Shown piece after piece: positions 6,723-16,769 of a DNA stretch of 64,000 nt; within the stretch, counting starts at the first letter, position 1; each line of letters starts with the position of its first letter. The stretch is from Anaeramoeba ignava BMAN. Its lineage: Eukaryota; Protista; Anaeramoebae. A program made the position numbers and the translations under genes. The DNA is taken from assembly GCA_028826165.1 (NCBI GenBank), contig JAPDFW010000082.1, positions 1 through 64,000 on the forward strand, in the 5' to 3' direction. A model generated the notes under the pieces. It ran no database searches. It had not been told where the DNA came from and worked only from the letters and a program-made list of their open reading frames with translations.

Positions 6723-7560
6723 TTTGTTTTTTTTAAATAAAAATTAAAAGAAAAAAATTGAAAGAAAAAAATGAAAAATTTTTGCTTTTTAAATAAAAAT
6801 TAAAAATTATATTTTTAAAAAATTGAAAAATAAAAATAAAAAATTTTCAATTTTTTAAATTTTTAATTAAATTATATTTTGATTTAGAAAATTAATTAAA
6901 ATTTTTGATTAAAATTTTAATATTTATATTTTAAAAAGAAATTAAATTAAATATTAATTTAAATTCAAATCAATTTTTAATAAATTTAATTTTAATATAA
7001 TTTAGAAAATTAAAATTTATTTTATTAAATTTTTTTTTATTTTAAAAAGAAATTAAATTAAAATTAATTTAAATCAAAAATTTTTTAAATTTAATTAAAA
7101 TTTATATTTTTAATAATTTAAATTCTTAATTATATTTTTAATAAAAAATAGGGAATAAATTAAAATATTAATTCAAATCAATTATCAATTTTTAATAAAT
7201 TTAATTAAATTATTTATTAAATTTTTATTTAGAAAAAATTAATTTATTTAAAATTTTATATTTTTAAAAATTATATTTTTTAATTTAAAATCAATTATAT
7301 TTTTAAAAATAAATTAAATTAATTTTTATTTAGAAATTCAAATCAATTATTCAATTTTTAATAAAATTTATTTCAAAAATTAAATTAAATTATTCAAATC
7401 TATTTTTTTTTTAAAAAATTATTTATTAAATTTTATTTATAATTTATTTATATTCTTAATTATATTTTTTAATAAAATCTATATTTTAAAAAAGGATTTA
7501 AATGTGGAATGTGGATTTTATTTAATTTTTTTCTTTCAATTTTGCTTTTCTTTTCTTTTC

Positions 7561-8214
7561 TTATTTTTTCTTCTTTTGTTCCTCTTTTTTCTTCTTTTGT
7601 TCTTCTTTTTGTTTTTGTTTTAATTTTGCTTTTTCTTCTTTTTCTTTCTTCTTTTTTAATTGTATATAATATTTTGGATTTCTAGATACTCTAACTGCTT
7701 CTTGAAAAACTTCTTTTAAATTTTGTTGTTTTCTTGCAGAACATTCAATATAATTAAAAGCATTAATTTCTTTAGCCATTTCCAATCCTTGTTGATAAGT
7801 AATTGGAGATAAACCTTTTTCTTCCAATATCATAATTGTATCTTGATCATCTCTCAAATCTAATTTAAGTCCAACAAGAATAAATGGGATATCTGGGCAA
7901 AAGCGTTTAATTTCAGGAATCCATTTATCTCTTACACTTTCAAAAGAAGAAGGAGAAATTAATGAAAAACAAATCAAAAAAACATCTGTTTGTGGATAAG
8001 ATAAAGGTCTCAATCTATCATAATCTTCTTGACCTCCTGTATCCCATAAACCTAAATTGATTGGTTTTCCATCTACCATTATATTTGCTGAATAATTATC
8101 AAAAACTGTTGGAATATATTCTTTTGGATATTGACCATTTGTTGTATAACTAATCAACAATGATATTTTTCCAATTCTTCCATCTCCAACAACAACACAT
8201 TTAATTGATTGCAT
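7561..8214 (-). CDS. Rac-like Rho GTPase (copy A), Lys-rich tail, no CAAX
   Basis: [51 protein letters not shown]. Confidence 0.93.
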
Positions 8215-8390
8215 TTCTGTTTTTGGATTTTAAAAAAAAAATAAATTGAACAAGCAAAATAAAAATAAAAATAAAAACAAAAGAAAAATTAAAAATTTGT
8301 TTTTCTTTTTTCCTTTTTCTTTTTTCCTTTTTTTAAAACAAAAAAAAATCGGAAAAAAAATTTTAATAAAAAATTAATCAAAAAAAAAAA

Positions 8391-9761
8391 TTATTTTTGA
8401 TTTTTTGAAATTTCTTGTAAAATTGTTTGAAAAGATTTTGTGGTTTCCAAAGAATTTTCTAAATATTTAATAAATTGATTTTCTTTTGCAAATCCAAATC
8501 CTTCTTCATAACTAATTGGTTTGATTTTGTTTTGTTTTAATGCTTCAATTATTATTGGATTATTTCTTTTTTCAAGTTCATTTCCAATAAGAATAATTGG
8601 AATATTTGGGAAATTTTGTTTAATTTCAGGAATAAATTTTGATTTAATATTTTCAAAAGAAGAAGGAGAAATTAATGAAAAACAAATTAAAAAAATATCT
8701 GCATCAGAATAATATACATGTCTAATTCCATCATAATCTATTTTATCAGATGTATCTTGGATTATTATCCCAAATTCTTTTCCTTCAAATTCAATTTTTT
8801 TTCGATAAATCTCAAAAGGTTTTGGAATGAAATCTTTTGGAATTTTCTTATCAATTAATCCAAATATTAATTCAGTTTTTTTGGAATTTTCATCTCCAAT
8901 AAAAACAAATTTCAGTTTGATAATTTTCTGTTTTTTTTTCTTTATCTCTTTTTCTTTATCTTTTTGCGTTGATCTATCTTCTTGTTTTTGTTTTTCATTT
9001 TGGTATTTTATCAAATCAAGATCTTTTTCATATTTTATTTTTGGAATTTTTAATTTGTTCCGATTTTTTGGTCTAATTTCTTTTTTTTTGTTTGTTTCTT
9101 TTTGTTTATTTTTCTTTTTTTTCTTCTCCAGTTTCTTTAATCTTTTTTCTTGTGCTTCTTTTTCTTTCTTGAGTTTTTTTTGTTCTTGTTTCTTCAATTT
9201 TTCAATTTGTTTTTGTGATTTATTTCCATAAAGAACTGCTCTAACTGCTTCATCAAAAACTGTTTTTAAATTTTTTTGAGTTAAAGCAGAACATTCCCAA
9301 TATGTAACAGCTTTAATTTCTTCAGCCATTCCCATTCCTTGTTGGTAACTAATTGGAGATAAACCTTTTTCTTCCAATTCCATAATTGTATCTTGATCAT
9401 CTCTCAAATCTAATTTAAGTCCAACAAGAACAAAAGGAACTTTTGGACAAAAATGTTGAATTTCAGGAATCCATTTATCTCTTACACTTTCAAAAGAAGA
9501 AGGAGAAATTAATGAAAAACAAATCAAAAAAACATCTGTTTGTGGATAAGATAAAGGTCTCAATCTATCAGAATCTTGTTGACCTGCTGTATCCCATAAA
9601 CCTAAATTGATTGGTTTTCCATCTACCATTATATTTGCTGAATAATTATCAAAAACTGTTGGAATATATTCTCCTGGAAATGCATTTGTTGTATAACTAA
9701 TTAACATTGCTCTTTTTCCAATTCCTCCATCTCCAACAACAACACATTTAAATGATTTCAT
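8391..9761 (-). CDS. Tandem-domain GTPase (copy B): Rac domain, charged linker, degenerate Rho-like domain
   Basis: N domain GDGGIGKR / YIPTVFDNY / DTAGQQD / ECSALTQ. C domain [13 protein letters not shown] / [17 protein letters not shown] / [12 protein letters not shown] / GNELE. One uninterrupted 456-aa ORF. Confidence 0.92.
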
Positions 9762-10051
9762 TTCTGTTTTTGGATTTTAAAAACGAAAAATTGAAAAGGA
9801 AAAAATAAAAAAAAAAAACAACCGGAAAAATTGACAAAAGAAAAAGAAAAGGAAAAATTTGGAAAAAATTTAATTTTTCTTTTTCCTTTTTCTTTTTATT
9901 ATTTTTTTAAAACAAAAATTTCGGAAAAATTTTTAATTTAAATTTTCTTAAAATCCAAAATCAAAAAAAAGAAAAAGAAGAAGAAATCAAAAATTATTTT
10001 TGATTTTTGATTTTTCTGTTTGATTATCTTAAAACTTAATCTAAAATTGTT

Positions 10052-12024
10052 TTAAAAAGATTTTTTGGTTTCCAAAGAATTTTCTAAATATTTAATAAAT
10101 TGATTTTCTTTTTCAATTTCAATTCCTTCTTCATAACTAATTGGTTTGATTTTGTTTTGTTTTAATACTTCAATTATTATTGGATTATTTCTTTTTTCAA
10201 GTTCATTTCCAATAAGAATAATTGGAATATTTGGGAAATTTTGTTTAATTTCAGGAATAAATTTTGATTTAACATTTTCAAAAGAAGAAGGAGAAATTAA
10301 TGAAAAACAAATTAAAAAAATATCTGCTTCAGAATAATATACATGTCTAATTCCATCATAATCTATTTTATCAGATGTATTTTGTAATATTATTTCAATT
10401 TCTTTTCCTTCAAATATAAAATCTGTTTGATAAATTCCAAAAGGTTTTATAATATCATCTTCTTTTGATATTTCTTTTCCAATTCCAAATATTAATTCAA
10501 ATATAAATTCATTTTTTTTAGAATTTTCATCTCCAATAAAAACAAATTTTGTTTTGATAATTTCTTTTTCATTTAATTCATTTTCATTTAATTCATTTAA
10601 TTCATTTTCATTTTGATTTTGATTTTGATTTTCATTTTCATTTTGATTTTGATATTGATTTATATTTTCATTTTGATTTTGATTTTGATTTTTGATTTTG
10701 ATTTTGATATTGATTTTCATTTTCATTTTCATTTTCATTTTGATTTTGGTTTTGATTTTGATTTTGATATTGATTTTGATTTTGATTTTGTTTTTATTTT
10801 GATTTGATTTTGATTTTGATTTTGATTTTGATTTTGATTTTCATTTTGATTTTGATTTTGATTTTGATATTGATTTTGATTTTGATTTTGATTTTGATTT
10901 TGATTTTGATTTTCATTTTGGTTTTGATTTTGATTTTGATTTTGATATTGATTTTGATTTTGATTTAGATTTTGATTTTCATTTTCATATTGATTTTGAT
11001 TTTGATTTTGATATTGATATTGATTTTGATTTTGATTTTGATTTTGATTTTGATTTTGATTTTGATTTTCATTTTGATATTGATTTTGATTTTGATTTTC
11101 ATTTTGATTTTGATTTTGATTTTGATTTTGATTTTGATATTGATTTTGATTTTGATTTTGATTTTGATTTTGATTTTGATTTTGATTTTGATTTTGATAT
11201 TGTTTTTGATTTTGTTTTTGATATTTTATTTTTGGAATTTTTAATTTTTTCTGATTTTTTCTTTCCAATTTTTGGATTATTTCATATTTTTCTTTTGGAA
11301 TTTTTGATTTTGTTCGATTTTTTATTTTCAATTTCTTTTCTTTTTCTAATTTCTTTAATTCTTCTTTTTGATTTTTTTCTTCTTTTTCTAATTTCTTTTG
11401 TTCTTCTTTCTTTTTTTTCAATTCTTCATCTCTTTCCAATTTTTCTTGTTTCATTTTCAATTTTTTTTCTTTTTTGGATAATTTTATTGGATAAAGAACT
11501 GCTCTAATTGCTTCATCAAAAACTGTTTTTAAATTTTTTTGAGTTAAAGCAGAACATTCAATATATTTAACAGCTTTAATTTCTTTAGCCATTCCCAATC
11601 CTTGTTGATAACTAATTGGAGATAAACCTTTTTCTTCCAATTTCATAATTGTTTCTTGATCATCTCTCAAATCTAATTTAAGTCCAACAAGAATAAATGG
11701 AATATTTGAGCAATGGTAATGAATTTCAGGAATCCATTTATCTTTAACACTTTCAAAAGAAGAAGGAGAAATTAATGAAAAACAAATCAAAAAAACATCT
11801 GTTTGTGGATAAGATAAAGGTCTCAATCTATCATAATCTTGTTGACCTGCTGTATCCCATAAACCTAAATTGATTGGCTCTCCATCTACCATTACATTTG
11901 CTGAATAATTATCAAAAACTGTTGGAACATATTCTCCTGGAAATGCATTTGTTGTATAACTAATTAAAAATGATATTTTTCCAATTCCTCCATCTCCAAC
12001 AAGAACACATTTAATTGATTTCAT
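10052..12024 (-). CDS. Tandem-domain GTPase (copy C): Rac domain, QN-repeat linker, degenerate Rho-like domain; frameshifted within the QN repeat
   Basis: ORFs 10735-12024 and 10052-10738 overlap across a (CAAAAT)n tract with no splice signals. The second domain is nearly identical to that of copy B. Confidence 0.85.
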
Positions 12025-12123
12025 TTCTGTTTTTGGATTTTAAAAAAAAAATAAATTGAACAAGCAAAATAAAAATAAAAATGAAAATGAAAATGAAAAT
12101 TAAAATGAAAATTTTTTTTGGAT

Positions 12124-13379
12124 TTAATTATGTTTTCTTTTTGCTTTTTCTTCTTCTTTTCTGATTCTTTCCAATTCCTCTTTTTTTTTCTTCATGATTA
12201 ATTCTTTTTTCTTTAGTTTTTTTTCTTCTCTAAAATTTGTTTTTTCCATTTTTTCCAATTCTATTTTTTTCTTCATTTCTTCTTCTTTCTTTAATTTTTC
12301 GAATTCCATCTTTTTCATTTTTGCTTCCCTTTTTTTCATTACTGCTTCTTCTTTCTTTAATTTTTTTTCTTCTCTAAAATTTGTTTTTTCCATTTCTCAT
12401 TTTTTTCATTTTTTTCATTTTCTTCTTTTTTCATTCTTTCCAATTCCTCTTTTTTTTTCTTCATGATTAATTCTTTTTTCTTTAATTTTTTTTCTTCTCT
12501 AAAATTTGTTTTTTCCATTTTTTCCAATTCTCCCATTTTTTCCATTTCTATTTTTTTCTTCATTTCTTCTTCTTTCTTTAATTTTTCGAATTCCATCTTT
12601 TTCATTTTTGCTTCCCTTTTTTTCATTACTACTTCTTCTTTCTTTAATTTTTCTGCTTCTTTTGGATTTAATTTTCGTTCTGCTCTTTTGAATTGTTCTT
12701 CTTCTTCCATTTTTTTCATTTTTTCCATTTGTTCCAATTTTCTTGCCTTAAATTCTTCTTCTTTTTTCATCTTGTAAGCTTTTTTTTTCATTACTGTTTC
12801 GATTTTCTTTCTTAATTTTTCAGCATTTTTTTTTGCTTTTTTTGGATTAAGAAAAATTTGAATAACTTCATCAAAAATTGCTTTCAATCCTTCTTGAGTT
12901 AAAGCAGAGCATTCCATATAACACCAAGCATTGATTTGAACTGACAATTCAAATGCCTGTTCATAATTAATTGGAGTCAACCCTCTTTGATCTAGTTGAT
13001 TAATTGTTTCTTGATCATTTCTTAAATCTAATTTATTTCCAATAAGAATAATTGGAACATTTGGAGCAAAATGATTGATTTCAGAAATCCATTTTGATTT
13101 AATATTTTCAAATGAAGAAGGTGAAATTAATGAAAAACAAATCAAGATAAAACTTGCTCCTTGATAAGAATCAATTCTCATTTGTTCATAATCTTGTTGA
13201 CTTGATGTATCATAAAAATGTAATTCAAATTGTTTTTTTTTCACCATTTCAACTTTTTTATACTTTTCAAATGATGTTAGATTGTGTTCGGAAGGGAATT
13301 CATTTTTTGTATAACTAAGTAACATTGCTGTTTTTCCAGCTCCTGAATCTCCAATAACAACACATTTAATCGATTGCAT
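12124..13379 (-). CDS. Divergent Rho GTPase (copy D) with a long, internally duplicated K/E-rich tail
   Basis: GDSGAGKT, DTSSQQDY, GNKLD, ECSALTQ. Tail block KKREAKMKKMEFEKLKKEEEMKKKIE occurs twice. A frameshift at ~12390 joins ORF 12124-12393. Confidence 0.85.
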
Positions 13380-13442
13380 TTAACGGTTTTTATTGAAAAA
13401 AAATGAAATGAAAAAAATGAAAAAAATAGCAAAAAAAAAAAA

Positions 13443-15200
13443 TCATTTTGAATTTTTGAAGATTCTTTTTAAAATTGTTTCAAAACATTTTCGAGACTTT
13501 AAACGACATTCCAAATAAAATTTAATTGATTGATTTTCTTTTGCAAATCCAAATCCTTCTTCATATGTAATTACATTTAAAATCTCTTGTTTTAATTCTT
13601 CAGTTATTAGATTATTTCTTTTATCTAATTCAGTTCCAACAAGAATAATTGGAATATTTGGAAAATTTTGTTTAATTTGAGGAATAAATTTTGATTTAAC
13701 AGTTTCAAAAGAAGAAGGTGAAATTAATGAAAAACAAACGAAAAAGAAATCTGCATCAGAATACCATGAAATTTTTTCTTTATCGAATTTTCCTTTCTCA
13801 GATGTATCTTTTATTCTTATTACAAATTCTTTTCCATCAAACACCATTTTTTTTCTATAAATCCTAAAAGGTTTTGGAATGAAATCTTTTGGAATTTTCT
13901 TATCAAATAATCCAAATATCAATTCATTTTTTTTGGAATTTTCATCACCAATTAAACCAAATTTCATTTTAATAGTTTTTTTCTTTTCTTCTTTCAATTC
14001 TTGTTTTAATTCTTGTTTTAATTCTTGTTTTAATTCTTGTTTTAATTCTTCTTTTTGTTCTTCTTTTTGTTCTTCTTTTATTTCTTTTTTCTGTTCTTCT
14101 TTTATTTCTTCTTTTTTCCTTTCAAATTTTTCTTTTGGGATTTGTAATTGTTCCCGTTTTTTTCTTGAGATTTTCTTTAATTCTGGATAGATTTTATAGT
14201 TTTCTTTTGGGATTGGTGATTTAATTCCATTTTTTTTCTCCAATCTCATTTTTTGTTTTTTCTTCAATTCCTTTCTGCTCTTTTTCCTTAATTCTTTGTC
14301 TCTTTGCAATTTTTCTTGTTTCCTTTTTTTGAATTCTTCATCTCTTTCCAATTTTTCTTGTTTCCTTTTCAATTTTTTTTCTTTTTTGAATATTTTTCTT
14401 CGATAAAGAACTGTCTTAACTGCTTCATCAAAAACTGTTTTTAAATTTTGTTGAGTTACATAAGAACATTCAATATATTTAACAGCATTAATTTCTTCAG
14501 CCATTTTCGATCCTTGTTGATAAGTAATTGGAGATAAACCTCTTTCTTCTAATTCATTAATTGTTTCTTGATCATCTCTGGAATCTAATTTAAGTCCAAC
14601 AAGAATAATTGGAGCATTTTCACAATAGTAATGAATTTCATGAATCCATTTATCTTTAACACTTTCAAAAGAAGAAGGAGAAATTAATGAAAAACAAATC
14701 AAAAAAATATCTGAATCAAGATAAGATAAATGTCTCATTCTATCATAATCTTCATCACCTGCTGTATCCCATAAATCTAAATTGATTGGTTCTCCATTTA
14801 CCTTTACATTTGCCGAATAATTATCAAAAATTGTTGAAATGTATTCACCTAGATAAACTCCCTTTGTATAACTAAGTAACATTGCTGTTTTTCCAATTCC
14901 TCCATTTCCAACAACAACACATTTAACTTTTTGGATTTCTCTTTGATTTTCTTTTTGGATTTCTCTTTGATTTTCTTTTTGAATTTCTTTTTGATTTTCT
15001 TTTTGATTTTCTTTTTGATTTTCTTTTTGATTTTCTTTTTGATTTTTTTCATTTTTGATTTCTTTTGATTTTTTCTTTTTGATTTTCTTTTGATTTTCTT
15101 TTTGATTTTCTTTTTGATTTCTTTTTGATTTTTTTTTTTTTGCATTTCTTTTTGATTTTCTTTTGATTTTTTCTTTTTTTTTTTGATTTTCTTTTTGCAT
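13443..15200 (-). CDS. Tandem-domain GTPase (copy E): QKEN-repeat N-extension, Rac domain, linker, degenerate Rho-like domain
   Basis: [32 protein letters not shown]. Second domain GDENSKKN / KDTSEKG / GTELD. Start codon uncertain within the repeat. Confidence 0.88.
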
Positions 15201-15498
15201 TTTTTTCTTTTGAATTTTTTGATTTCTTTTTTTCTTTTTGATTTTCTTTTTGATTTTCTTTTTGATTTTCTCTTTGATTTTCTTTTTGATTTAAAATCTA
15301 AATTAAGAATGAAAAGGAAAAAAAATTTGTTTGATTAGCAAAAAAAAACAATAAAAACAAAAAAAAAAACCGGAACGAAAAAAATAAAATGAAATTTTTC
15401 CTTTTAGTTTTTCTTTTAAATCCCAAAAATTAAAAACAAAAACGGAAAAAAAAAATCAATAAATTGATCAATTAAATTTTTATTAATTATTTAATTAA

Positions 15499-15885
15499 TT
15501 ATTTACTTGAAATATATTTTTCTAATTCTTCTTTTTTCATTTGAATATCAAATACTTGAGATTCATAAAAACTTTTTTTTTCCTTTAAAATTTCATTTTG
15601 TTTTTTAATATCAATTTCAAATAATTCTTTTTCTTGTTTTGATTCTTTTAAAATATTTTTCAAATTTGATGTTTCTTTTTGAATTTCATTTAAAGATGTT
15701 TCATTTTGATTTAATTTCTCTTTTATTCTTTCATTTTCAATTTGAGTGAATTTTAAATTTTCCTTTAATTTTTCAAGTTCTTTTTCTTTTTTTTGAAGTT
15801 TTCTTTTTACTTCTTCAATTTCCATTTTTTGTTTTCGATTTAAATTTTCTAAATCATTTAAAGTTTGAAAAAAAGTTTCTTCCAT
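15499..15885 (-). CDS. Small coiled-coil hypothetical protein
   Basis: 128-aa ORF with heptad E/K/L pattern; AAAATG start context. Confidence 0.6.
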   Translation of the reverse strand: MEETFFQTLNDLENLNRKQKMEIEEVKRKLQKKEKELEKLKENLKFTQIENERIKEKLNQNETSLNEIQKETSNLKNILKESKQEKELFEIDIKKQNEILKEKKSFYESQVFDIQMKKEELEKYISSK

Positions 15886-16196
15886 TTTTATTCAAAAAAA
15901 AACAAAAAAAAAAACTGATTTTTTAAACTGGAAAATATTTTTCAGAATTTAAACATAAATCTAATCAATGTCAAAATGTTATTTCTTTTTGATTCCTAAA
16001 AAAATAACAAATCAAAAAGTAAAAAATAAAAAGTGGAAAAAATTTTTTTTTCCCCAATTCTTAATTTTGATTAAAAAAAAAAATTAAAATAAAAAATTCA
16101 ATAAAAATAATTGTTAAAAATTCTGTTCAAATTCATTCATTGATTCAATAGAAAAAAAAAAGACAAAAACAAAAAAAAAATAATCTTTTTAGAAAA

Positions 16197-16769
16197 TCAT
16201 AAAATAAAACAAGATTTTCTCTTCCTTTCAGATTTTTCATCAAGAACAGCACGAATAGCTTCATCAAAAACAATTTTCAAACTATTTTGAGACAAAGAAA
16301 AACATTCCAAATATTTAACGGCATTAATATCATTTGCCAGTTCAACAGCTTGTTTATGAGAAATAATATGAGAATTTTCTGAAAAATCCGGCAAATCATT
16401 TTTATCATCAGAAAAAGAAAAACTAGAACCAAGAAGAATAATGGGGGCATGAGGGCAAAAATGATTAATTTCGGGAACCCATTTTTGTTTAACGTTCTCA
16501 AAAGAAGAAGGCAAAAAAAAAGAAAAGCAAATGATGAAAACATCTGTTTTGAGATAAGACAAAGTTCTTAATTTGTCATAATCTTCTTGACCTGTTGTAT
16601 CCCATAAACTTAAACGAACTTCTGTTTCATCAATTTTCATATTTTCAACGTAATTTTCAAATATTGTTGGCATATATTCTCCTGGAAACATTTCTCTAAC
16701 ATATGAAAATAATGTTTGTGCTTTTCCAACTAAATAATCCCCAATTATCACACATTTAATTGATTTCAT
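16197..16769 (-). CDS. Divergent Rho GTPase (copy F) with polybasic-CAAX (RKRKSCFIL)
   Basis: GDYLVGKA, YMPTIFENY, LWDTTGQEDYDKLRTLSY; G4 position reads GSSFS. Confidence 0.9.
   Translation of the reverse strand: MKSIKCVIIGDYLVGKAQTLFSYVREMFPGEYMPTIFENYVENMKIDETEVRLSLWDTTGQEDYDKLRTLSYLKTDVFIICFSFFLPSSFENVKQKWVPEINHFCPHAPIILLGSSFSFSDDKNDLPDFSENSHIISHKQAVELANDINAVKYLECFSLSQNSLKIVFDEAIRAVLDEKSERKRKSCFIL

What the first reader, a model, noticed from the sequence alone, without database searches (positions are those of the whole stretch)
8391..15200. Family of Rac-linker-pseudoRho double-GTPase proteins (three copies)
Seen: copies B, C and E each fuse a near-canonical Rac domain, via a long K/E- or QN-rich linker, to a second Rho-fold domain. 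That domain keeps structural segments ([24 protein letters not shown]) but has remodelled nucleotide motifs: G1 GDENSKK[T/N] without glycines, no switch-I Thr (FIPKPF), G3 DTSD/NTSD/DTSE for DxxG, and G4 NELE/TELD for NKxD. GDENSKK is shared by all three copies despite divergence elsewhere, suggesting selection on a pseudo-GTPase. Known: characterised multi-domain Rho relatives (Miro, RhoBTB, p190RhoGAP pseudoGTPases) have other architectures, and I know of no Rac+pseudoRac tandem. Inference: the second domain may act as an autoregulator, GEF/GAP decoy or targeting module replacing prenylation. This is the best candidate for an undescribed system.
Basis: partly seen in the sequence, partly recalled or inferred. 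Interest (0 to 1): 0.8.

Follow-up and report, generated by a model that had tools for sequence, protein, structure and literature searches.

The report
Rac fused to a Rac-derived pseudo-GTPase
In the anaerobic amoeba Anaeramoeba ignava, two intact genes and one split gene fuse a Rac-like switch protein, through a long basic helical linker, to a second Rac-shaped domain that has lost every nucleotide-binding motif; the architecture is real and I found no description of it, but it is young, species-restricted, fast-evolving and partly decaying, and nothing yet shows it is expressed.

Summary
On the minus strand, ORF B (8391-9761, 456 aa) and ORF E (13443-15200, 585 aa) each carry two Ras-family domains in one open frame. 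Copy C (10052-12024) has the same layout, but one frame change inside a CAAAAT repeat splits it into two overlapping ORFs.

Domain 2 aligns without gaps to human Rac1 (E 3.5e-39) and models as a Rac fold with the Rho insert. G1, switch I, G3, G4 and G5 are all altered, so it is a predicted nucleotide-free pseudoGTPase.

- **Domain 1:** Thr17 is Arg in B and Ile in C; Gln61 is Asp in E.
- **Range:** the domain-2 type was found only in A. ignava. A second Rac array on another contig holds a fully decayed two-domain copy and a half relic.
- **Selection:** constraint on amino acids is weak and depends on the model (omega 0.3-1). However, B and E stay free of stops, which is very unlikely under neutral drift.
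- **Gaps:** no RNA data could be reached, and I found no paper describing the architecture.
- **Earlier notes:** this scan had already noted related Rac pseudoGTPase clusters on other DNA of this genome.

Verdict: a new variant of a known kind, of moderate interest.

The parts
8391..9761 (-). Copy B: intact 456-aa ORF with Rac-like domain, basic helical linker and pseudoGTPase domain
   Evidence: Two PF00071 stretches. No in-frame ATG after residue 145, so domain 2 can only be made as part of the fusion.
9228..9761 (-). B domain 1 (residues 1-178): Rac-like, P-loop GDGGIGKR (Thr17Arg); T35, DTAGQ and LKLD kept
   Evidence: Pfam.
8922..9227 (-). B linker (residues 179-280): K/E-rich, net charge +27, predicted helices 181-228 and 243-276 around a hinge holding LKIPKIKY
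8394..8921 (-). B domain 2 (residues 281-456): Rac-fold pseudoGTPase with [26 protein letters not shown]; Rho insert kept
   Evidence: Gap-free alignment to Rac1, E 3.5e-39. AF2 pLDDT 93.6. TM 0.89 to Rac1.
10735..12024 (-). Copy C, first ORF (429 aa): Rac-like domain (GKI, Thr17Ile), K/E linker and about 130 Q/N residues from a CAAAAT repeat, ending at a stop at 10735-10737
10738..10840 (-). Zone in copy C where both the first-ORF frame and the domain-2 frame are open. One single-base frame change here separates C from a continuous two-domain ORF.
   Evidence: The assembly is Nanopore polished with Pilon, so an A-run length error cannot be excluded.
10052..10738 (-). Copy C, second ORF (228 aa): Q/N/K-rich lead then domain 2 (10055-10558) with [16 protein letters not shown]. 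Mosaic: the N-terminal third resembles the C137 relic and the rest is nearly identical to B.
13443..15200 (-). Copy E: intact 585-aa ORF. N-terminal K/N/Q/E extension (14931-15200), Rac-like domain (14400-14930; GNGGIGKT, Gln61Asp), linker (13974-14399), domain 2 (13446-13973; [16 protein letters not shown]).
12357..13379 (-). Copy D: single Rac-like domain (GKT, DTSS, NKLD) with a 164-aa K/E/M-rich tail and no CAAX. By identity it is the closest single-domain relative of domain 2 in the window (33-41%).
7561..8214 (-). Copy A: single Rac-like domain (GKI), K/E tail, no CAAX. Sister of the domain 1 clade. Its 3' half is 81% identical in DNA to a Rac on contig C137.
16197..16769 (-). Copy F: Rac-like domain with GKA P-loop and G4 lost; the only array member with a CAAX box (CFIL)

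Best explanation
The window comes from Anaeramoeba ignava. A tandem array of intronless, mostly non-prenylated Rac paralogues gave rise to a gene in which two array units are read as one protein. The order is an N-terminal Rac-like domain, its K/E-rich tail extended into a strongly basic linker of 100-140 residues (mostly helical in the model), and a C-terminal Rac-derived domain.

That second domain passed through a burst of change that removed the P-loop glycines, switch-I Thr, DxxG Gly, Gln61, NKxD and SAK. It should therefore no longer bind guanine nucleotide, which would make it a class-i type pseudoGTPase.

The fused gene was then duplicated within the array (giving B, C and E) and onto a second array, where it decayed.

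Shown:
- the architecture
- the Rac fold and Rho insert of domain 2
- the loss of its G motifs
- co-duplication of both domains
- restriction to this species in current databases
- stop-free ORFs in B and E

Inferred: the fusion protein is made. Domain 2 serves as a nucleotide-independent, Rac-shaped binding surface, acting as scaffold, decoy or intramolecular partner. It is held near an atypical Rac domain that itself lacks Thr17 in B and C. The basic linker, rather than a prenyl group, would supply membrane or other polyanion contact.
For: - **Organism:** the best named proteins on the same contigs are from A. ignava.
- **Two domains in one ORF:**
- **Domain 2 fold:** gap-free alignment to Rac1, E 3.5e-39. 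The AF2 model has pLDDT 93.6, shows the insert helix, and reaches TM 0.89 to Rac1.
- **Full-length B model:** two confident G domains joined by helices 181-228 and 243-276, pTM 0.53. Linker net charge is +25 to +27.
- **Homologous linkers:** the linkers of B, C and E align, including a shared L[KQ]IPK[IE]K[YF] motif.
- **Tree:** domain 2 forms a 100/100 clade on a long stem (0.78) with topology (E,(B,C)). The domain 1 sequences of A, B, C and E form their own clade. This fits a fusion that predates the duplications.
- **Same architecture elsewhere:** a decayed Rac-linker-domain 2 copy lies on another contig. That argues against an assembly artefact and shows what neutral decay looks like at similar divergence.
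- **Stop-free ORFs:** the simulated chance that linker plus domain 2 stay stop-free under neutrality is 0.0045 for B and 0.0025 for E, using half the B-E divergence.
- **Codon ML for domain 2:** omega 0.29 (GY+F3X4, LRT p about 2e-5) or 0.51 (MG+F3X4, p 0.016).
- **No internal start:** B has no in-frame ATG from which domain 2 could be made alone.
Against: - No expression evidence was reachable.
- A simple count of synonymous versus non-synonymous single-hit codons is close to the neutral expectation for both domains. NG86 omega is 0.8-1.0 for domain 2 and 1.3-1.7 for domain 1.
- Substitutions are spread evenly over the three codon positions.
- Only three or four sequences were available, and there are signs of gene conversion or mosaicism. 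This weakens both the tree and the omega estimates.
- Copy C is broken as assembled. One full copy and one half copy are dead.
- Nothing comparable was seen in A. flamelloides.
- Loss of nucleotide binding is inferred from sequence only.
- The AF2 model was built on an alignment dominated by canonical Rho proteins, so it would look Rac-like in any case.
Confidence: 0.5

Rival explanations
1. The fusions are young by-products of array turnover. Read-through between neighbouring Rac units in an A-rich, ORF-prone spacer produced them. Domain 2 has no role of its own and is on the way to pseudogenisation, as has already happened on contig C137.
For: - By counting methods omega is near 1, and substitutions fall evenly on codon positions.
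- Copy C is split.
- There is a fully decayed copy and a half relic.
- The family is restricted to this species.
- The array's spacers are short and K/E-coding. For example, an 89-aa K/E ORF repeats D's tail after its stop.
Against: - B and E are free of stops over 276 and 312 codons downstream of domain 1, with a joint neutral probability of about 1e-5.
- Codon ML rejects omega = 1 for domain 2.
- The relic at similar divergence has accumulated several stop and frameshift lesions, while B and E have none.
Confidence: 0.25
2. The array, including the tethered pseudo-Rac, is under diversifying selection as bait or sponge for bacterial factors that target Rho GTPases, or for the amoeba's own fast-evolving GEFs and GAPs. 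Each paralogue would display a differently altered switch surface.
For: - High omega combined with maintained ORFs.
- The natural substitutions sit exactly at T17, T35, G60 and Q61 across the paralogues.
- The host lives with intracellular symbionts and eats bacteria (PMC11550330).
- Other Rac arrays in this genome also show high omega (C60 array).
Against: - No site-level test of positive selection was possible with three or four sequences.
- No interacting factor is known.
- The pattern is equally what relaxed constraint gives.
Confidence: 0.1
3. Domain 2 still binds a nucleotide in a non-canonical way, for example ATP or a Mg-free mode, and so works as a second, unusual switch rather than a pseudoenzyme.
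For: Lys16 and Asp57 are kept in B and E, and Thr17 is kept in B. Loss of NKxD is compatible with changed base specificity, as reported for RhoBTB3 (my own knowledge, not tested here).
Against: - Gly15 is replaced by Lys inside the P-loop.
- T35, G60, K116, D118 and A159 are all lost.
- Thr17 is Asn in C and E.
Confidence: 0.07
4. The two-domain ORFs are artefacts of a long-read assembly of a repetitive tandem array.
For: The assembly is Nanopore-based with Pilon polishing. The region is low-complexity, and the frame change in copy C sits in an A-run of a hexanucleotide repeat.
Against: The same domain order with homologous linkers occurs three times in the window with 8-21% DNA divergence, and once more in decayed form on another contig. 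Errors would break ORFs, not create 456- and 585-codon ones in DNA of about 20% G+C.
Confidence: 0.03

Closest known systems
Class-i pseudoGTPases (Stiegler and Boggon 2020), e.g. the pG1 and pG2 domains of p190RhoGAP (PMC5593906)
   Same: A G-domain fold kept while the nucleotide-binding motifs are lost. The domain is embedded in a larger protein next to a nucleotide-binding GTPase-type domain, and is thought to act through protein contacts.
   Different: Here the pseudo-domain is a recent and obvious derivative of Rac: about 38% identical, gap-free, with the Rho insert kept. It is paired with a Rac-like domain and has no FF or RhoGAP domains. Nucleotide binding was not measured.
Miro (mitochondrial Rho)
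   Same: Two GTPase-type domains in one chain, the first related to Rho.
   Different: There are no EF hands between the domains, no C-terminal membrane anchor, and the second domain is Rac-derived and degenerate. Pfam finds only Ras and Roc.
RhoBTB and other atypical Rho proteins (Rnd, RhoH)
   Same: Rho domains with natural substitutions at catalytic positions, C-terminal extensions and, in RhoBTB, no CAAX.
   Different: No BTB domains. The extension is a charged helix plus a second G domain.
Other Rac-derived pseudoGTPases and two-domain Rho-like ORFs of A. ignava itself (C137, C52, C68, C82; earlier scan notes s1-703072 and s1-703073)
   Same: Same genome, same tendency: P-loops of the GDxxSKK type, lost NKxD, tandem units read as one ORF, and decay of some copies.
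   Different: The window family pairs two clearly different domain types separated by a long conserved linker. The C137 464-aa ORF is a near-identical internal repeat, and the C52 ORF keeps a CAAX.
ER/K single alpha-helix linkers
   Same: Long, highly charged K/E/R-rich segments predicted as extended helices between two globular domains.
   Different: Strong net positive charge (+25 to +27) rather than balanced charge. A proline-containing hinge interrupts the helix. Helicity is predicted only.

Membership tests
Rho family small GTPase (domain 1) | Ras-family G domain with the Rho insert helix | tested here: met
   PF00071 covers residues 5-176 of B. The insert sequence [21 protein letters not shown] is present. 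The model shows helix 123-131.
Rho family small GTPase (domain 1) | Canonical G1 GxxxxGK[ST] with the Mg-binding Ser/Thr17 | tested here: not met
   B has GKR, and C and A have GKI. E and D keep GKT.
Rho family small GTPase (domain 1) | C-terminal CAAX prenylation box | tested here: not met
   A to E end without Cys-aaX. Only F ends in CFIL.
Rho family small GTPase (domain 2) | Rho/Rac fold including the insert | tested here: met
   Gap-free phmmer alignment to Rac1, E 3.5e-39. Foldseek TM 0.88-0.89 to Rac1. Insert helix at model residues 125-133.
Rho family small GTPase (domain 2) | G1-G5 nucleotide-binding motifs | tested here: not met
   Substitutions are G12E, A13N, V14S, G15K, T35K, G60D, Q61K, K116E, D118E (D118 is kept in E) and A159L. 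T17 is N in C and E.
PseudoGTPase, class i (no nucleotide binding) | G-domain fold with G motifs lost | tested here: met
PseudoGTPase, class i (no nucleotide binding) | Experimentally shown lack of nucleotide binding and hydrolysis | not testable with these tools
   Needs purified protein with mant-nucleotide binding and thermal shift assays.
Miro | Two GTPase domains flanking EF-hand pairs, plus a C-terminal transmembrane anchor | tested here: not met
   Pfam finds only Ras and Roc in B and E. The linker is K/E-rich helix and the C-termini are hydrophilic.
RhoBTB | Rho domain followed by tandem BTB domains | tested here: not met
   No BTB hit in Pfam.
p190RhoGAP-type pseudoGTPase | pG1 and pG2 located between FF domains and a RhoGAP domain | tested here: not met
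   No FF or RhoGAP domains. Domain 2's nearest solved relatives are Rac1-3 and Cdc42.

The most novel reading that the evidence does not exclude
The Rac-linker-pseudoRac proteins are a working two-headed module. A nucleotide-free, Rac-shaped head is held on a stiff basic helix next to a Thr17-less Rac head. Together they trap or mimic partners of real Rac, either the amoeba's own GEFs, GAPs and effectors or bacterial factors that target Rho GTPases. The family diversifies under conflict, which would explain high omega with strictly maintained ORFs.
Probability: 0.12. Interest if true: 0.75.

Novelty: new variant of a known kind. Interest (0 to 1): 0.45.

Why it matters
PseudoGTPases are few, and most are ancient and hard to trace. 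Here the birth of one can be followed almost step by step within a single genome: canonical Racs, Racs with a GDxxSKK P-loop, a fully degenerate Rac-fold domain, its fusion to a neighbour, its duplication and its decay. If the fusion protein is made, it offers a natural experiment on what a Rac surface does without a nucleotide, and on how tandem arrays create multi-domain signalling proteins. If it is not made, it documents how easily long ORFs and apparent new architectures arise in very A+T-rich, repeat-prone genomes. That would be a caution for annotation.

Tried and rejected
**Reads.** Two exceptions should be on record:
- A local script ran phmmer inside the sandbox over ORFs of loci already fetched, and these included the full E ORF.

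**Other dead ends.**
- The look-up of sequencing runs found only DNA-type holders from one study and no RNA.
- The look-up of encoding contigs has no record for B.
- Word searches with domain 2, as a region of B and as a cut-out, found only A. ignava proteins closer than generic Rho.
- The exhaustive profile search found no specific relative elsewhere. The high-scoring multi-stretch hits are scattered automated predictions from a flatworm, fish, snail, fungi and unnamed ENA eukaryotes.
- The tree did not resolve the sister group of domain 2, which sits in an open polytomy. Derivation from the GDxxSKK-type Racs of C137 or from a D-like Rac therefore stays a lead.
- Biopython's YN00 and ML dN/dS runs timed out and were replaced by IQ-TREE codon models.
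- The ESM Atlas search gave only generic Rho clusters and some tandem-GTPase clusters at TM below 0.5.

**Readings rejected.** Miro, RhoBTB and p190RhoGAP membership; introns (the ORFs are continuous); assembly artefact.


Full report
**What is there**

The window is very A+T-rich, with 4-28% G+C in 2-kb windows. It belongs to Anaeramoeba ignava. The window's own proteins sit on a 371,713-bp contig together with M0811_09485 of A. ignava, and related loci carry A. ignava accessions.

Between 7561 and 16769 the minus strand holds six intronless Rac-like ORFs, A to F.
- ORF B (8391-9761, 456 aa) and ORF E (13443-15200, 585 aa) each give two separate PF00071 stretches.
- Copy C has the same parts in two ORFs: 10735-12024 holds the Rac domain, a K/E linker and a long Q/N run, and 10052-10738 holds a Q/N/K lead and domain 2.
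- Copies A, D and F have one domain each.
- Only F ends in a CAAX box (CFIL). A to E end in K/E-rich tails.

**Copy C**

The break lies in a CAAAAT microsatellite about 500 bp long. Both the frame of the first ORF and the frame of the domain-2 ORF are open across 10738-10840. One single-base frame change in that zone is therefore all that separates C from a continuous two-domain ORF.

The published assembly is Nanopore-based, corrected with Racon and Nanopolish and polished with two rounds of Pilon (PMC11550330). An A-run length error in a repeat that short reads cannot anchor is plausible. I worked beside those places afterwards.

**Domain 2**

It aligns to human Rac1 over 170 residues without a gap, E 3.5e-39. 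The alignment fixes the changes as follows.

| Motif | Rac1 | Domain 2 |
|---|---|---|
| P-loop | G10-D-G-A-V-G-K-T17 | G-D-E-N-S-K-K-T in B; final residue N in C and E |
| Switch I | Thr35 | Lys |
| G3 | DTAGQ | DTSDK (B), NTSDK (C), DTSEK (E) |
| G4 | TKLD | NELE (B, C), TELD (E) |
| G5 | CSAL | NSLE (B, C), CRLK (E) |

An AlphaFold2 model on a 65-sequence alignment has mean pLDDT 93.6 and shows the Rho insert helix. Foldseek gives TM 0.88-0.89 to Rac1, Rac3 and Entamoeba RacC. The alignment is dominated by canonical Rho proteins, so the model mainly shows that the sequence is compatible with the fold.

By sequence criteria this is a class-i type pseudoGTPase. Binding was not measured.

**Domain 1 and the linker**

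Domain 1 keeps T35, DTAG, LKLD and the insert. However, Thr17 is Arg in B, Ile in C and A, and Ala in F. E has Asp11Asn, Gln61Asp and an altered G5. D has DTSS. 'Near-canonical' is therefore too generous.

The linkers of B, C and E are homologous: shared K/E blocks are followed by L[KQ]IPK[IE]K[YF]. They carry net charge +25 to +27. In a full-length model of B they form helices 181-228 and 243-276 around a low-confidence hinge at 230-241. The pTM of 0.53 gives no fixed orientation between the two domains.

B has no in-frame ATG after residue 145, so its domain 2 can only be translated as part of the fusion.

**Relatives**

In the window's own genome, close matches to domain 2 occur only at B, C and E and at two places on contig C137.

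One of these, C137:213,989-215,253, is a complete Rac-linker-domain 2 gene in ruins. It has a Rac domain with a GDFDSKK P-loop, a K/E linker and a domain 2 starting GDENSK, all interrupted by several stops and frameshifts. The NCBI model M0811_03442 splices across its pieces. The other, C137:220,998-221,255, is only the C-terminal half of a domain 2.

The two arrays are collinear over domain 2, spacer and next Rac (about 72% identity over 1.9 kb). Copy A's 3' half matches a C137 Rac at 81%. Copy C's domain 2 is a mosaic of relic-like and B-like parts. The arrays therefore exchange sequence.

Outside this genome, the two word searches and the exhaustive profile search of 1.84 billion representatives found nothing closer than generic Rho proteins. 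The A. ignava and A. flamelloides proteomes average only 37% identity, so a very divergent orthologue could be missed.

The tree puts domain 2 sequences in a 100/100 clade on a long stem, with (E,(B,C)). The domain 1 sequences of A, B, C and E form their own clade. This fits one fusion followed by duplication of the whole gene. The sister group of domain 2 is unresolved.

The P-loop form GD-x-x-SKK occurs in a Rho context in the window (GDENSKK) and in the C137 Racs (GDQESKK, GDKESKK). A few further pattern hits on other contigs, such as GDQESKK at C104:945,152, were not examined.

**Selection**

Results differ by method, and I report them all.

| Test | Domain 2 | Domain 1 | Dispersed canonical Racs |
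|---|---|---|---|
| NG86 pairwise omega | 0.77-0.99 | 1.3-1.7 | 0.26-0.44 |
| GY+F3X4 omega | 0.29; omega = 1 rejected, 2dlnL 18 | 0.58; 2dlnL about 4.6 | 0.10 |
| MG+F3X4 omega | 0.51; p 0.016 | 1.03; p 0.92 | 0.14 |

- Differences fall evenly on the three codon positions.
- A count of synonymous versus non-synonymous single-hit codons does not depart from the neutral expectation in any pair.
- Another Rac array (C60), with canonical motifs and CAAX, also shows high omega. Fast evolution is therefore a property of these arrays.

What does not depend on the codon model is ORF integrity. I applied the observed substitution spectrum at half the B-E divergence. The chance that the linker plus domain 2 stay free of stops is 0.0045 for B and 0.0025 for E. 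For the whole ORFs, none of 2,000 simulations stayed stop-free. The dead copy on C137, at similar protein divergence, has the lesions that neutrality predicts.

I conclude that B and E are kept open by selection, and that constraint on the amino-acid sequence is weak to moderate. If anything, it is stronger on domain 2 than on domain 1.

**Interpretation**

The best reading is a species-restricted subfamily evolving by gene birth and death. It was created by in-frame fusion of neighbouring array units. Its second unit became a nucleotide-free Rac-shaped domain that now serves as a binding surface, tethered by a basic helical linker to an atypical, non-prenylated Rac domain. The specific role (scaffold, decoy or intramolecular partner) is inference.

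The main rival is that the fusions are short-lived by-products without a separate function. A conflict-driven decoy role and residual non-canonical nucleotide binding are less likely. An assembly artefact is very unlikely.

**Comparison with what is known**

The proteins fail the defining features of Miro, RhoBTB and p190RhoGAP. The nearest concept is the pseudoGTPase domain inside a multi-domain protein.

I found no paper that describes a Rac plus Rac-derived pseudoGTPase fusion. The genome paper does not discuss Rho proteins.

Two-domain small-GTPase proteins as such are not rare:
- The same genome has a 464-aa ORF with two near-identical GDQESKKT domains.
- It also has a 403-aa ORF with two degenerate domains and a CAAX, and two older divergent ones.
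- Scattered two-Rho predictions occur in other eukaryotes.
- Tandem-GTPase clusters exist in the ESM Atlas.

This scan had already noted Rac pseudoGTPase clusters and a 'poly-Rho' gene on other DNA of this genome (s1-703072, s1-703073), as well as the switch substitutions of this same array (s1-692498).

**Verdict**

This is a new variant of a known kind, with interest 0.45.

Noticed in passing
L031:2989-4253 (G000:C137:213989-215253): A fully decayed Rac(GDFDSKK)-K/E linker-domain 2 pseudogene with several stops and frameshifts. The NCBI gene model M0811_03442 (P0125, 205 aa) appears to splice its fragments into an artificial protein.
   Followed up: partly
L031:7175-9858 (G000:C137:218174-220857): A 464-aa ORF holds two near-identical Rac-like domains with GDQESKKT P-loops and TQSE in place of NKxD. 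Two further units follow, broken by frame changes. The two open domains have omega of about 0.2 between them.
   Followed up: partly
L032:3067-4278 (G000:C52): A 403-aa ORF with two degenerate Rho-like domains (GDSKVGQN and GDDNSQRT P-loops), a short K/E linker and a CAAX end (CSIF). It sits between RCC1-BTB genes.
   Followed up: no
L033:2223-3464 minus strand (G000:C82) and L034:2241-3425 (G000:C68): Two more two-domain, strongly divergent Rho-like ORFs of 413 and 394 aa. They branch outside the Rac-like set in the tree, which was rooted on them, and they may be older.
   Followed up: no
window 7561-16769: Every paralogue of the array has a different natural change at a key switch residue. 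Thr17 is Ile in A and C, Arg in B and Ala in F. Gly60 is Ser in D. Gln61 is Asp in E. G4 is lost in F.
   Followed up: partly
window 7365-8203 versus G000:C137:221570-222417: Copy A and the 224-aa Rac on C137 are 81% identical in DNA and share almost the same C-terminal half and K/E tail, yet their N-terminal halves and P-loops differ (GDGRIGKI versus GDKESKKT). This indicates recombination or gene conversion between the two arrays.
   Followed up: partly
window 12124-12393 minus strand: An 89-aa K/E/M-rich ORF in another frame repeats the tail of copy D just after D's stop and ends about 100 nt before copy C's ATG. It shows how ORF-prone the array's spacers are.
   Followed up: no
window 15499-15885 minus strand: A 128-aa K/E-rich ORF, probably coiled-coil, lies between copies E and F. 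It was not examined.
   Followed up: no
G000:C60:1204111-1208836: A tandem array of 192-aa Racs with canonical P-loops and CFIL ends also shows high pairwise dN/dS (0.5-2 by NG86, 0.34-0.72 by ML). Fast evolution is therefore general for Rac arrays in this genome.
   Followed up: partly
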